IMG/VR virus record: IMGVR_UViG_3300029993_000005
Span: 1 to 64,000 of that record
Length of the DNA stretch: 64,000 nucleotides
Reading direction: 5' to 3' (one strand)
Made by a program: the position numbers and the translations under genes. Below the pieces are notes generated by a model that was given only the letters and a program-made list of their open reading frames with translations, did no database searches and had not been told where the DNA came from. Below, one piece after another: positions 26,319 to 32,262 of this stretch. Position 1 is the first letter of the stretch, and each line of letters begins with the position of its first letter.

Positions 26319-27269
26319 TTATCTTATGTGTTGTTGCAACCTTGTGAATAGTTTTTGAACCTGATTATCCGTGTACCCGAAGTAAGTTTGAGCCTTCTTC
26401 TGGTACCTGCTGAATGCTACATTATCAACTAATACCGAATTGTCGGATCCCAAGAATTCAGAAAATCCTTCATGGAAGTGTCCGGCACAACACAACAAAA
26501 ATTCTTGCGCGTCCTCACGAACCCTGTGCGATATATTTACTAGGGCCTCCAGATGCTCCTTAGCATGCGCTAAATAGGTGCTAGGGGCCTCCAAAGACAG
26601 TACTTCATCCACCTGTACATGATAGCTCTCGGTCATACCCTCGTGGTTGACGTACAAGCGTTGTCGTCCGGGACTCGTGTGATAAGTAATTAAGGTCTGT
26701 CCTGTGTTGTGAATCGCTGATTTTGCCGTGTTCTCAAAGTGCAGCAACGATTCAAAACGTGGGTACGACATATACAACGCCTTTATTGCTGCTGTCTCCA
26801 TGTCGGCTTGCAGATCATCCCTGCGTACACCATAACTCTTGATCAGAAAAGTCATCTTCTTGCTGATAAACTTTCCGATGTACGAGGACAAGGACTGACC
26901 AGTAATCGTGTCCGAGACTAAGGTATCGAAGTCCTCCACCGAGTATGCAGGATAAGTCAAAGGCAAGTGTTTCAGATTCAACCTAGATAGAAACTTAGCA
27001 TCTTTTAAAGTGACTCCAAAGTCAGAGGCCTTTGGCTTAGGTGAACCGAACCTAGATTTGTAGAAGGCCCAAGCATACAGCTTGCAGTTCTTTAACACCT
27101 CTCCGTCTGTTCGCACCATAGAGAGTACACGTTCGGCCTTCTCAGGGTCACCTACTAGTTTGACTAGTGTTCGTTGATCAATATCCGGTCTGTGAAACAG
27201 ATAAGCAAATAAAGCACCGCCAACATATGCCATCTCATGACTGGATAGCCCCAATTTATTTTGCAACAT
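26319..27269 (-). CDS. putative divergent sigma70-family factor
   Basis: RRDDLQADMETAAIKALYMSYPRFESLLHFENTAKSAIHN resembles region 2; C-terminal AQTYFGYTDNQVQKLFTRLQQHIR resembles region 4 HTH; ATG 27269 behind GGGGGA. Confidence 0.55.
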   Translation of the reverse strand: MLQNKLGLSSHEMAYVGGALFAYLFHRPDIDQRTLVKLVGDPEKAERVLSMVRTDGEVLKNCKLYAWAFYKSRFGSPKPKASDFGVTLKDAKFLSRLNLKHLPLTYPAYSVEDFDTLVSDTITGQSLSSYIGKFISKKMTFLIKSYGVRRDDLQADMETAAIKALYMSYPRFESLLHFENTAKSAIHNTGQTLITYHTSPGRQRLYVNHEGMTESYHVQVDEVLSLEAPSTYLAHAKEHLEALVNISHRVREDAQEFLLCCAGHFHEGFSEFLGSDNSVLVDNVAFSRYQKKAQTYFGYTDNQVQKLFTRLQQHIR

Positions 27270-27310: not shown

Positions 27311-28021
27311 TCAACGTGTGATATTGAAACTCAATTGATCCACAACATCGGCAACGCGACTTCGCCGGGACCTGGACTTAGAGCTAGTCTTGGACTTATC
27401 TTTAGTATCAAACATTTGGGGAAACGTATCGATAGTCGGCGGTTCATACGCATCGATAATAGAGTTTCGTACAATCACTTTATTATTGGGATCATGAATC
27501 TTGTTGGCTAGTTGCAGTTCAGTGCGCTTGACTCGCCACTGCTGGGCCGTCATAAGTCCTTCTGAATTTTGATTGATATAAGAAACAAAGGATGAGCCAC
27601 GTGTGCGCTTGTCAGGACTACCCATGAGTATAAGTTGACCACCCGAGGTATAACCCATGACGAAAGCAGCCAGATAGTTTGAAACGAAGTCGCGACCCAC
27701 CTTGAAATAGAGTTTGGTTCCCATCTCGAATTGACGCTTGCGCTGGTCCCTGAGCAAGCCTAGAAATATCTTACGTTCTTTGGTAGTGAAATTTTGAAAC
27801 AGAGAAGCAATCTGTACAAACTGATCGCTATTTTTAGCTACTTGAGTGACGTCAGGGGTGAAACAACGAGGGGCAATACCCACGCCCTTCACTCCCTCCT
27901 CGATACATACTTTGTCTCTACTTGAGTGTGCATGATGTTTGTAATGCAGACACTCGTTGCAGCGAAATGCTTCACTTAAGGACTTTGCGCTTGCAGTACC
28001 CAGCGAGTCTTTTTTCAACAT
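27311..28021 (-). CDS. hypothetical with N-terminal Cys/His metal-binding motif
   Basis: CNECLHY...VC...PRCF. Confidence 0.75.
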   Translation of the reverse strand: MLKKDSLGTASAKSLSEAFRCNECLHYKHHAHSSRDKVCIEEGVKGVGIAPRCFTPDVTQVAKNSDQFVQIASLFQNFTTKERKIFLGLLRDQRKRQFEMGTKLYFKVGRDFVSNYLAAFVMGYTSGGQLILMGSPDKRTRGSSFVSYINQNSEGLMTAQQWRVKRTELQLANKIHDPNNKVIVRNSIIDAYEPPTIDTFPQMFDTKDKSKTSSKSRSRRSRVADVVDQLSFNITR

Positions 28022-28575: not shown

Positions 28576-29022
28576 TTAGTCTGAGAAGTGTCTACGGTAC
28601 AAATTGTCTAAGGCTAGATTAATCAAGGCCTCTCTACTGCGCAAGCTTGGATACACTTTCTTTAGTACTTCTAACTGATGCTGCTTTTTTCGATCAAGCG
28701 TTAGTATAACAACGACTCGTTTGTTTGGATCATTTTTTACAGCTTCGAACGCATTAAAAACACGTGTTGCCAACCACAATATTTTCTGTTTAGCCTCGTC
28801 CGGCTCACCTAGCAAAAGTTGAAAATAGGGTTTTTTAGACTTGATGCTCAGCGCGATTTTGTGTAGGCAAGTATGGTGTCCATCGCACAGAGACACCGTG
28901 GGCCCGTCAGAGCCGCCAGCTGCACGGGGGACTATATGATGTTCCTCTCTGTTGGCCGAGCCACCGCAGCCTACGAACTTAGAACGACACACCCAACAGT
29001 GGTCAAGAACTATTGAGTCCAT
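28576..29022 (-). CDS. HNH endonuclease with C-terminal RHH-like segment
   Basis: CWVC...EEHHIVPRAAGG...LCDGHHTCLH; VILTLDRKKQHQLEVLK...SREALINLAL. Confidence 0.85.
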   Translation of the reverse strand: MDSIVLDHCWVCRSKFVGCGGSANREEHHIVPRAAGGSDGPTVSLCDGHHTCLHKIALSIKSKKPYFQLLLGEPDEAKQKILWLATRVFNAFEAVKNDPNKRVVVILTLDRKKQHQLEVLKKVYPSLRSREALINLALDNLYRRHFSD

Positions 29023-29510: not shown

Positions 29511-29519
29511 TATTTACTA
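29511..29519 (-). promoter_or_regulatory. TAGTAAATA motif
   Basis: Intergenic, upstream of 29450. Confidence 0.55.
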
Positions 29520-31642: not shown

Positions 31643-31682
31643 ACGTTTCTCTAGTGGCTTGTACTAAAATTGAATTCCAAAT

Positions 31683-31727
31683 AAAGAATGGGGCCGAACT
31701 CTTGACCTTGAGTAAGCCCCATTCTTT
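31683..31727 (-). terminator. intrinsic terminator after the 31766 gene
   Basis: aaagaatgggg / ccccattcttt stem, T-rich follow-on on the minus strand. Confidence 0.7.
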
Positions 31728-31765
31728 TGTTTCCTTCAGTTACCAAACGTATACTGATTCAGCTA

Positions 31766-32191
31766 TTAAATCAAGAAATCGTCCTTGCTGATTTTCTTGA
31801 CCTTGGTTTGCGCCGGAACTTTCGGACCCGGCTTTGTTGCTTGCGGACGGATCTTATTCTCAACTTTACCCTTGGTGTTGGCTACTTTAGCCTTCGGTGC
31901 CGGGGCAGCTTGGACTTTGGCGTTAGCACGAACCTTACGTACCGGCTCGTCATCTTCCTCAGCTGCACGCTTGGCACGCGGACCCTTCGGGGCACCCAGC
32001 TTCTTACCTTGGGTCGTGCCCTTAGCTTCAGCCTTTTCCTTAGCAGCTGCAGCGCGAGCCTTGATGTTTTCAATGCGTTCCGACAGCTTTTCATTCTGAG
32101 CTGTCAGCTTTGCATTTTCACGACTCAGATTTGCGACTACTGCCGCAATGTTCTTTGCTTGTTGCACTACGTTTTCTTGAGACGTTGCCAT
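31766..32191 (-). CDS. Lys/Ala-rich basic protein with N-terminal coiled coil
   Basis: Start moved to ATG 32191 behind AAAGGAAA. Confidence 0.8.
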   Translation of the reverse strand: MATSQENVVQQAKNIAAVVANLSRENAKLTAQNEKLSERIENIKARAAAAKEKAEAKGTTQGKKLGAPKGPRAKRAAEEDDEPVRKVRANAKVQAAPAPKAKVANTKGKVENKIRPQATKPGPKVPAQTKVKKISKDDFLI

Positions 32192-32253
32192 TTTGAATTT
32201 CCTTTGAGGGAGGGGTTTTAATTGCATGCACGTTTATTGTAATGCACACATAG

Positions 32254-32262
32254 TATTTACTA
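32254..32262 (-). promoter_or_regulatory. TAGTAAATA motif
   Basis: Intergenic, upstream of 32191. Confidence 0.55.

What the first reader, a model, noticed from the sequence alone, without database searches (positions are those of the whole stretch)
26319..27269. Divergent sigma70-like protein, candidate reader of TAGTAAATA
Seen: a region-2-like segment (DDLQADMETAAIKALYMSYPRFESLLHFENTAKSAIHN, compare DLxQEGxxGLxxAxxxFD...FxTYA..WI) and a C-terminal HTH-like segment. They follow an unusual N-terminal extension of about 130 aa. Inference: a phage sigma factor whose altered region 2.3/2.4 residues could specify a non-host -10 element.
Basis: inference. Interest (0 to 1): 0.6.

Follow-up and report, generated by a model that had tools for sequence, protein, structure and literature searches.

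The report
Hidden sigma-like factor in jumbo phage
This gene of a peat-soil jumbo phage encodes a member of a large, unnamed protein family whose predicted fold matches the core domain of bacterial sigma factors, so it probably helps redirect the host's RNA polymerase. It is not shown to be the reader of the TAGTAAATA promoter motif, because the phage has a second sigma gene and this gene itself sits behind such a motif.

Summary
The ORF is real: window 26319-27269, minus strand, 316 aa. It is conserved in at least 649 protein clusters, all unnamed. Sequence methods do not see sigma (Pfam, PDB profiles and my hhalign runs gave nothing). A confident AlphaFold model (pLDDT 91) does: sigma factors dominate the nearest folds in three structure libraries, centred on residues about 109-206 (sigma domain 2). 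The C-terminal 89 aa look like a region-4 helix-turn-helix, but the test was inconclusive. The N-terminal 55-105 aa have no assigned fold.

Pseudomonas phage PaBG gp112 is a family member (hhalign 99.3%). It was once tentatively called a second sigma on an HHpred result of 97%.

TAGTAAATA is a genuine promoter-like element. There are 32 exact, gene-co-oriented copies in the 230-kb genome, with no -35 element. Its core GTAAATA is the top over-represented word in three fully scanned relatives.

The link between this protein and the motif is not established, for three reasons:
- The genome has a second, recognised sigma gene at 114264-115241.
- Both sigma-like genes lie downstream of TAGTAAATA sites.
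- The motif is absent from the tail module, which carries another candidate motif, AATTTTAT.

Verdict: sigma-like, probably yes (about 0.6). Reader of TAGTAAATA, unproven (about 0.2).

The parts
26319..27269 (-). CDS of the sigma-like protein (P0001, 316 aa plus stop)
   Evidence: ORF list and translation. RBS-like GGGGGA before the ATG. 649 homologous clusters.
26946..27269 (-). Residues 1-108: family-specific N-terminal helical region. The helix at 56-72 may correspond to sigma region 1.2.
   Evidence: Conserved throughout the family (profile positions about 10-314 matched). pLDDT >93. Some fold matches start at residues 57-64. No fold assigned to residues 1-55. A weak Sigma70_r1_2 lead (score 0.75) is below the tool's threshold.
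26652..26945 (-). Residues 109-206: four-helix sigma-domain-2-like core (helices 111-123, 125-146, 150-168, 175-198)
   Evidence: VIA-align: SigE N-terminal domain Z 8.3, 2.8 A over 79 of 80 residues; ShbA Z 8.5, 3.2 A over 103; sigma-A domain 2 with -10 DNA Z 6.7, 2.7 A over 81. About 29 of the top 50 entries are sigma factors. 9 of 10 nearest ESM Atlas cluster sets are sigma families. Half of the near-invariant family residues fall here: K138, F141, Y169, P170, H177, K183, G190, I194.
26589..26651 (-). Residues 207-227: lower-confidence linker with a short beta-hairpin
   Evidence: pLDDT 65-75; strands at 205-207 and 213-215.
26322..26588 (-). Residues 228-316: small six-helix C-terminal domain, possibly sigma region 4 with an insertion
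   Evidence: Domain model pLDDT 86. Foldseek found nothing significant. Best VIA Z is 4.9; sigma-A domain 4 scores Z 4.6, 2.7 A over 59 of 62 residues. A colinear but non-significant hhalign match to RpoH region 4, P 0.054.
29511..29519 (-). TAGTAAATA site 60 nt before the first gene of the co-directional gene run that ends with the topoisomerase gene and this gene
   Evidence: No above-chance sigma-70-type promoter or terminator lies between it and the gene. Equivalent GTAAATA sites lie 1.8 kb and 3.6 kb upstream of the homologues in phiRSL1 and Motura.
26534..26542 (-). TAGTAAATA copy inside the CDS (codons for residues about 243-245), 215 nt before the next gene
   Evidence: Not present in the phiRSL1 or Motura homologues, so its function is doubtful.
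27311..28021 (-). Upstream neighbour: phage-type DNA topoisomerase (phrog_17701). The pairing with this family is conserved.
   Evidence: PHROG E 3.6e-47. The same order, topoisomerase then family member, occurs in phiRSL1, Motura, Lauda, PhiXhv-12 and PaBG.
28576..29022 (-). HNH-like endonuclease ORF in the same gene run
   Evidence: An H-N-H-type motif is visible in the translation. Weak PHROG hits only. 'Endonuclease' is annotated at the same relative position in Motura and PhiXhv-12.

Best explanation
The gene encodes a highly divergent, phage-encoded member of the sigma-70 superfamily. It has a sigma-domain-2-like core (residues about 109-206, possibly preceded by a region-1.2-like helix), a flexible linker, and a small C-terminal helical domain that may be a region 4 with an insertion. 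The phage has no RNA polymerase of its own. The protein is therefore inferred to bind the host core polymerase in place of the host sigma and direct it to a phage-specific promoter class that has a -10-type element and no -35. The gene is itself most likely transcribed from a TAGTAAATA promoter. The genome shows three promoter classes: host-type early promoters, TAGTAAATA in front of replication genes, and a weaker candidate, AATTTTAT, in the tail module. It also has two sigma-like proteins, this one and P0122. My leaning is that the two proteins divide the two phage-specific classes between them. This less conserved protein more likely serves the more variable, later class (AATTTTAT-like), and P0122 more likely reads GTAAATA. 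Shown here: the fold resemblance, the family size, the motif statistics and the gene order. Inferred: polymerase binding, promoter assignment and timing.
For: Fold:
- The AlphaFold model has pLDDT 91.
- The Foldseek PDB list is headed almost only by sigma factors, though at E>0.1.
- VIA-align against 48,161 representative chains: the top 8 are all sigma factors and about 29 of the top 50 are. Nearly the full domain is covered: SigE N-terminal domain 79 of 80 residues at 2.8 A, Z 8.3.
- ESM Atlas shape search: 9 of 10 nearest cluster sets carry Sigma70_r2/r4/ECF Pfam domains. The Atlas feature and structure search also returns sigma clusters.

Independent literature: PaBG gp112 belongs to this family (hhalign 99.3%, E 1.3e-20). 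Its authors reported HHpred 97.2% to sigma factors and 96.9% to SigmaE (PMC7412058).

Need for such a factor:
- No multisubunit or T7-type polymerase genes in the 97%-complete genome.
- The relative phiRSL1 is fully rifampicin-sensitive and has no polymerase (PMC5468394).
- There are at least two phage-specific promoter-like motifs but only one recognised sigma.

Conservation: half of the near-invariant residues lie in the helices equivalent to regions 2.1-2.4.

Expression logic: a GTAAATA site heads the gene run in this phage, phiRSL1 and Motura.

Promoter assignment (weak): among this phage, phiRSL1 and Motura, GTAAATA is invariant while the second motif varies (AATTTTAT / AATTTGATG / AATTTAATA). 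P0122 is the better conserved protein (56% and 47% identity, against 45% and 36% for this protein).
Against: - No sequence-level support was obtained here. Pfam found nothing for this protein or for 170 family members. Profile searches of PDB sequences found nothing. hhalign against E. coli sigmas and RpoE orthologues scored no better than reversed decoys. There was no profile similarity to the P0122 sigma family.
- All Z-scores are middling for a helical protein (8.6 at best), and the tool warns that such values can reflect a common helical arrangement.
- The C-terminal domain alone gave no significant match.
- The conserved neighbourhood is DNA-metabolic (HNH endonuclease, topoisomerase), not transcriptional.
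- The promoter assignment rests on three genomes and a weakly supported third motif: 8 intergenic sites against 0.5 expected.
Confidence: 0.5

Rival explanations
1. One reading: this protein is the sigma that reads TAGTAAATA (core GTAAATA). P0122 then serves the late class. The TAGTAAATA site ahead of this protein's own gene run would give positive autoregulation after a low early start.
For: The gene lies in the genome arm that holds 9 of the 10 host-type early promoters. In this phage, phiRSL1 and Motura its gene run has only GTAAATA sites upstream, whereas the P0122 run in this phage and Motura also has the AATTTTAT/AATTTAATA motif just upstream, as expected for a self-amplifying late sigma. 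The motif has no -35 and shares the TAAATA core with the T4 late promoter TATAAATA (my knowledge). Chain F of the T4 late-transcription complex 7d7d matches residues 110-203 at Z 7.3, 2.4 A over 79 residues.
Against: No early promoter was detected within 25 kb upstream of the gene, so the factor would have to be made before the promoter class that appears to drive it. P0122 is an equally good or better candidate: it is better conserved and sits next to the SSB gene, whose GTAAATA-type promoter is also annotated in Lu11. There is no direct evidence either way.
Confidence: 0.2
2. It is a polymerase-associated co-factor, not a free-standing sigma. It would work together with P0122, as T4 gp33 works with gp55 or SPO1 gp33 with gp34, or it would remodel the host holoenzyme.
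For: The two families co-occur. The same isolates carry both. At least nine metagenomic contigs of identical length appear in both homologue lists, for example 236941, 218286, 223162, 231605, 253919 and 249163 bp. The region-4-like domain is atypical. Both genes are in the same temporal class by promoter context.
Against: The best-matched part is the sigma-2 core, which in known systems belongs to the promoter-melting subunit itself, not to a co-activator.
Confidence: 0.1
3. It is not a transcription factor. It is a DNA-binding or accessory protein acting with the neighbouring phage topoisomerase and HNH endonuclease in replication, recombination or DNA processing, and the sigma resemblance is a generic helical bundle plus HTH.
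For: The order topoisomerase then this family (usually preceded by an endonuclease) is conserved from this phage to PaBG, Lauda and PhiXhv-12, at 17-31% protein identity. All sequence-level sigma tests failed. Z-scores lie within the range the tool calls common for helical proteins.
Against: Sigma factors dominate three independent structure libraries far beyond their share of those libraries. The sigma-2 domain is matched almost completely. HHpred on the PaBG orthologue points the same way. Gene order in these phages is broadly conserved, so neighbourhood alone is weak evidence.
Confidence: 0.2

Closest known systems
Pseudomonas phage PaBG gp112 ('possibly putative sigma factor', Evseev et al. 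2020, PMC7412058)
   Same: Same protein family over the full length (hhalign 99.3%, E 1.3e-20). Same position directly after the phage topoisomerase gene. Same genome type, with a separate RpoD-like sigma next to the SSB gene.
   Different: Nothing experimental is known for either protein.
Group 4 (ECF) and group 3 sigma factors, for example SigE, SigH, ShbA and sigma-28
   Same: Domain order of sigma-2-like bundle, linker, then small C-terminal helical domain. These are the best structural matches: Z 8.2-8.6, with 2.8-3.2 A over 79-103 residues for the sigma-2 part.
   Different: No detectable sequence similarity to Sigma70_r2 or r4. An extra conserved N-terminal region of 55-105 aa. The C-terminal domain has six helices, with an apparent insertion between the 4.1-like and 4.2-like parts. 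The candidate promoters have no -35 element, unlike ECF promoters.
Phage T4 gp55 late sigma (with gp33 and the gp45 clamp)
   Same: A divergent phage sigma that pairs with a strictly conserved promoter of 8-9 bp with no -35. TATAAATA in T4 (my knowledge) shares TAAATA with TAGTAAATA. Chain F of the T4 complex 7d7d matches residues 110-203, Z 7.3. I did not verify which T4 protein chain F is.
   Different: gp55 is a single-domain protein of about 185 aa (my knowledge), whereas this protein has conserved N- and C-terminal domains. TAGTAAATA here precedes replication genes and is absent from the tail module, so it is not a late promoter in the T4 sense.
The phage's own recognised sigma, P0122 (phrog_17569; homologues include phiRSL1 and BcepSauron sigma, Lu11 gp174 and PaBG gp118)
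   Same: Similar size (325 aa). Found in the same phages. Also invisible to Pfam at curated thresholds and to PDB profile search. Also downstream of a TAGTAAATA site.
   Different: No detectable similarity between the two families. P0122 is named sigma in PHROGs and RefSeq and scored HHpred 99.9% for PaBG gp118. It is better conserved, and it sits beside the SSB and recombinase genes, not beside the topoisomerase.

Membership tests
Sigma-70 family | Sigma domain 2 fold (regions 1.2/2.1-2.4 helical bundle) | tested here: met
   Residues 109-206 superpose on sigma-2 domains: SigE N-terminal domain 79 of 80 residues at 2.8 A, Z 8.3; sigma-A domain 2 with -10 DNA 81 residues at 2.7 A. Sigma factors dominate the PDB and Atlas hit lists. 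Caveat: this is a predicted model and the Z values are middling.
Sigma-70 family | Sequence-profile match to Sigma70_r2 / Sigma70_r4 (Pfam PF04542, PF04545, PF08281) | tested here: not met
   No Pfam hit for the protein or for 69 plus 101 family members. Genome-wide scans with the three models did not hit this gene. My hhalign runs were not above decoys. The only published profile-profile result is HHpred 97.2% for the orthologue PaBG gp112.
Sigma-70 family | Region 4 helix-turn-helix domain (binds the -35 element and the beta flap) | tested here: inconclusive
   The C-terminal domain folded alone has pLDDT 86. Foldseek best E is 2.1. By VIA-align, sigma-A domain 4 scores Z 4.6 (59 of 62 residues, 2.7 A), but it does not stand above unrelated rows.
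Sigma-70 family | Binds core RNA polymerase (region 2.2 to the beta-prime clamp helices) and confers promoter-specific initiation | not testable with these tools
   Needs pull-down and in vitro transcription. The one complex prediction gave no verdict and is listed only under Tried and rejected.
T4 gp55-type late sigma | Single sigma-2-like domain of about 185 aa acting with a separate flap-binding co-activator and the sliding clamp | tested here: not met
   The protein is 316 aa, with conserved N- and C-terminal domains throughout the family. No co-activator was sought.
PaBG gp112 / phiRSL1 ORF011 family (unnamed; partial match to phrog_19229) | Full-length homology and position directly after the phage topoisomerase gene | tested here: met
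   45% identity to phiRSL1 ORF011 over 100% of the length. hhalign 99.3% to PaBG gp112. The topoisomerase neighbour is conserved.

The most novel reading that the evidence does not exclude
The family is a major, so far unrecognised branch of phage sigma factors (at least 649 clusters at 50% identity) with its own N-terminal domain. It would be the missing specificity factor of a three-stage cascade in polymerase-less jumbo phages of the phiRSL1/PaBG/Lu11 group: host-type early promoters, then GTAAATA, then AATTTnAT. Each phage-specific class would be a promoter of 8-9 bp with no -35, read by one of two unrelated sigma-like proteins. Its invariant pairing with a phage topoisomerase could mean that transcription initiation and DNA relaxation are functionally coupled.
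Probability: 0.2. Interest if true: 0.7.

Novelty: new variant of a known kind. Interest (0 to 1): 0.5.

Why it matters
Jumbo phages without their own RNA polymerase must reprogramme the host enzyme, yet for the phiRSL1/PaBG/Lu11 group only one sigma gene is annotated and no promoter has been mapped by experiment.

If this family is confirmed as a second sigma, it would:
- give a name and a testable function to hundreds of 'hypothetical proteins';
- explain how these phages run more than one phage-specific promoter class;
- add a very divergent example for studying how sigma domain 2 can be rebuilt to read a different -10-type element without a -35.

The promoter motifs found here are easy handles for experiments in the cultivable relatives: GTAAATA with a phage-specific 2-3 nt prefix, and AATTTnAT.

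Tried and rejected
- Pfam on the protein, on 69 members and on 101 members: no sigma hit. PHROGs gave only phrog_19229, function unknown, E 1.6e-5.
- phmmer and profile searches of PDB sequences with A1 and A2: nothing.
- hhalign of the family profile against the six E. coli sigma-70-family proteins, a six-sigma alignment and 36 RpoE orthologues: P 0.02-0.5, no better than reversed decoys.
- The word search with E. coli RpoE returned only near-identical orthologues, so it was of little use for a diverse profile.
- hhalign of this family against the P0122 family: no relation. The P0122 profile itself does not find PDB sigmas, so these HMM tests are insensitive for phage sigmas.
- Paralogue search in the genome with the family HMM: only the gene itself.
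- Complex prediction of residues 105-210 with E. coli beta-prime 240-335: no verdict (score 0.24 against a mark of 0.32, controls not run). This is neither evidence for nor against binding.
- Sigma-70-type promoter and terminator scan around the gene: counts at chance level.
- Sequencing runs: the locus occurs in many peat metagenomes, all DNA and kept as contigs, with no RNA run. Read laying was therefore not used, because contigs cannot show transcript starts.
- Exact TAGTAAATA in five relatives: nearly absent. This was explained once the shared core GTAAATA with a phage-specific prefix was found.
- Dyad search for a bipartite -35/-10 motif in the remaining intergenic regions: nothing above shuffles.
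- ACGAGGACT over-representation turned out to be coding for acidic runs.
- The original phiRSL1 paper (Virology 2010) is not in the library.

Full report
**The object.** On the minus strand, window 26319-27269 holds an ORF of 316 codons. The ATG at 27269 follows a GGGGGA run, and homologues align from residue 1. An upstream TTG at 27314 is therefore unlikely to be the start. The window is the first 64 kb of a 230,110-bp virus record judged 97% complete. The phage occurs in many peat metagenomes. Its nearest named relatives are the jumbo phages Ralstonia phiRSL1 (45% identity over the whole protein), Burkholderia BcepSauron/Saruman and BCSR5, and Achromobacter Motura. More distant relatives infect Pseudomonas putida, Vibrio and Xanthomonas. 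Every copy is annotated 'hypothetical protein'.

**Is it a real, conserved gene?** Yes. The word-indexed search found 125 homologues. The exhaustive profile search found 649 representative clusters at E<=1e-3 and 461 at E<=1e-10, and most cover the whole length including the N-terminal part. There is no paralogue in the genome.

**Is it sigma-like? Sequence methods say nothing.**
- Pfam is blank for this protein and for 170 family members.
- PHROGs gives one family of unknown function.
- Profile searches of PDB sequences are blank.
- My own hhalign runs against E. coli sigmas and RpoE orthologues are no better than reversed decoys.

These tests are weak for phage sigmas in general. The phage's own accepted sigma (P0122) also fails Pfam's threshold and the PDB profile search.

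**Is it sigma-like? Structure says yes for the central domain.**
- An AlphaFold model built on 69 sequences has mean pLDDT 91. Only residues about 205-250 are less confident.
- Foldseek against the PDB gives no significant E-value, but sigma factors head the list almost exclusively.
- VIA-align against 48,161 representative chains puts sigma factors in the first eight places and in about 29 of the first 50.
- The single-domain matches cover nearly the whole sigma-2 domain. SigE N-terminal domain: 79 of 80 residues, 2.8 A, Z 8.3. ShbA: 103 residues, 3.2 A, Z 8.5. Sigma-A domain 2 bound to -10 DNA: 81 residues, 2.7 A.
- A shape search of the ESM Atlas returns sigma families in 9 of its 10 nearest cluster sets, several of them viral. 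The Atlas feature search agrees.

The Z values are middling, and the tool warns about helical proteins. But sigma chains are a tiny share of these libraries, so their dominance in three of them is hard to ascribe to chance. Helices 111-123, 125-146, 150-168 and 175-198 correspond to the four sigma-2 helices. Half of the family's near-invariant residues sit there: K138, F141, Y169, P170, H177, K183, G190, I194.

**The flanking domains.**
- *C-terminal.* Residues 228-316, folded alone on 101 sequences (pLDDT 86), form six helices. Foldseek finds nothing. In VIA-align, sigma-A domain 4 appears near the top (Z 4.6, 59 of 62 residues, 2.7 A), together with the sigma-4-like WhiA HTH, but nothing stands out. 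A colinear, non-significant hhalign alignment to RpoH region 4 suggests a 4.1-like and a 4.2-like part separated by about 25 inserted residues. I rate region 4 as compatible but unproven.
- *N-terminal.* The region is conserved across the family. Several fold matches begin at residues 57-64, which would fit a region-1.2-like helix. Residues 1-55 have no assignment.

**Literature.** The PaBG paper (PMC7412058) describes gene 118 as a sigma-70 factor (HHpred 99.9%) and gene 112 as 'possibly' a second sigma (HHpred 97.2%, E 0.2; SigmaE 96.9%). I showed that PaBG gp112 is a full-length member of the present family (hhalign 99.3%, E 1.3e-20) and that it occupies the same position after the topoisomerase gene. 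PaBG gp118 corresponds by position to P0122: each is a sigma gene followed by the SSB gene. So the sigma idea has one tentative precedent and no experimental test. phiRSL1 has no polymerase and is fully rifampicin-sensitive (PMC5468394). This genome also shows no polymerase genes. Reviews state that such phages rely on phage sigma factors (PMC7824862, PMC13282480).

**The TAGTAAATA motif.**
- It is the most over-represented 9-mer of the genome: 32 exact copies against about 2 expected.
- Every copy has the orientation of the local genes. About 22 are intergenic and lie 13-110 nt before a start codon.
- There is no conserved -35 region. An A-rich extension follows, and a purine stands 7 nt after the motif in 30 of 32 sites, as expected for a start site after a -10-type element.
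- One-mismatch variants are rare.
- Genes behind it include the SSB, two helicases, a DNA methyltransferase and a peptidase.
- There is no copy between 115,540 and 165,911, the region that holds the baseplate and tail-fibre genes. It therefore behaves as a middle-type promoter, not a late structural one.
- The core GTAAATA is also the top over-represented word in phiRSL1 (CAGTAAATA, 14 against 0.07), Motura (TCGTAAATA, 31 against 0.39) and Lauda (GGTAAATA, 13 against 0.93).
- Lu11's annotated 'middle/late promoter' before its SSB gene contains TGTAAAT.

**Other promoter classes.**
- *Early.* Ten near-identical host-type promoters (an A/T-rich upstream element, TTGGCA or TTGACG, 16-17 nt, TATACT, then GGAATCAC) lie in the genome. 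Nine are on the minus strand of the window. They are followed by a conserved leader and ribosome-binding site.
- *Candidate late.* AATTTTAT occurs at 8 co-oriented intergenic sites against 0.5 expected. These include sites before baseplate and tail-fibre genes and 20 nt before the first gene of the P0122 run. Motura has AATTTAATA: 6 of 7 copies are intergenic, 5 of them within 60 nt of a start codon, and one lies about 750 nt before its P0122 homologue. phiRSL1 has AATTTGATG.

**Who reads what?** The genome has two sigma-like proteins and at least two phage-specific promoter classes. Both sigma-like genes lie downstream of GTAAATA sites in this phage, phiRSL1 and Motura. No early promoter is detectable within 25 kb upstream of this gene.

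A weak comparative argument points the other way. Across three phages the invariant motif (GTAAATA) goes with the better conserved protein (P0122), and the variable motif goes with the more divergent one (this protein). I therefore put about 0.6 on 'sigma-like polymerase specificity factor'. Within that, I lean slightly towards a later promoter class over TAGTAAATA. None of this is shown.

**The main non-transcriptional rival.** The gene order endonuclease, topoisomerase, this family is conserved out to PaBG and to the Xanthomonas and Pseudomonas putida phages. That could mean a DNA-metabolic partner role. It could equally be module conservation, or a real coupling of initiation and DNA relaxation.

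**Verdict.** The sigma interpretation is partly supported: the sigma-2 fold is met, region 4 is inconclusive, and binding and specificity are untested. The link to TAGTAAATA is unproven and rivalled by P0122. The case is a divergent new variant of a known kind, tentatively flagged once before in PaBG, and of moderate interest.

Noticed in passing
window 406, 1250, 10908, 12306, 12718, 20088, 54290, 56049, 57525 (minus strand; each about 29 nt from the listed coordinate); also genome 71149 (+): A family of near-identical host-type early promoters: an A/T-rich AAAATAATTG element, TTGGCA or TTGACG, 16-17 nt, TATACT, then GGAATCAC. Three copies (12718, 54290, 57525) are identical over about 60 nt. 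This explains the over-represented word GTTGGCACC.
   Followed up: partly
window 10869, 12679, 47853, 51967, 52403, 53251, 54256 (minus strand); genome 71207, 71534, 72137 (+): A conserved leader, ccaACGAAAAGGA followed 6-10 nt later by a start codon (ATG in nine copies, GTG in one). It is a shared translation-initiation region of the genes behind the early promoters. Several copies show that my crude ORF caller chose starts that are too long.
   Followed up: partly
genome 92569, 113384, 121840, 142554, 178490 (+) and 151491, 158245, 228629 (-), all outside the window: AATTTTAT(A/G) is a candidate third promoter class: 8 co-oriented intergenic sites against 0.5 expected. Sites lie before baseplate and tail-fibre genes and before the P0122 sigma gene run. 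Related words are enriched in Motura (AATTTAATA) and phiRSL1 (AATTTGATG).
   Followed up: partly
genome 114264-115241 (+), outside the window: A second sigma gene (P0122, 325 aa; phrog_17569, E 1e-77). It lies immediately before a TAGTAAATA site and the SSB gene, the same arrangement as in Lu11 and PaBG. It has only a sub-threshold Sigma70_r2 hit (13.6 bits).
   Followed up: yes
window 27311-28021 and 28576-29022 (minus strand): A phage-type DNA topoisomerase (phrog_17701, no Pfam hit) and an HNH-like endonuclease ORF. Together with the sigma-like gene they form a gene order conserved across very distant jumbo phages.
   Followed up: partly
window 31643-32253 (minus strand): The TAGTAAATA site at 32254 is followed by 611 nt without a called co-oriented gene. 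A small unannotated gene or an RNA may lie there.
   Followed up: no
genome 115,540-165,911: A 50-kb stretch without a single TAGTAAATA copy coincides with the baseplate and tail-fibre module. This gives a clean promoter-class boundary.
   Followed up: partly
window 6787, 43402, 58505, 59023 and ten further genome sites: The over-represented word ACGAGGACT lies inside ORFs in all 14 copies, and about half sit in GAC/GAA/GAG-rich stretches that would encode acidic runs. It looks like a coding word, not a regulatory motif.
   Followed up: yes
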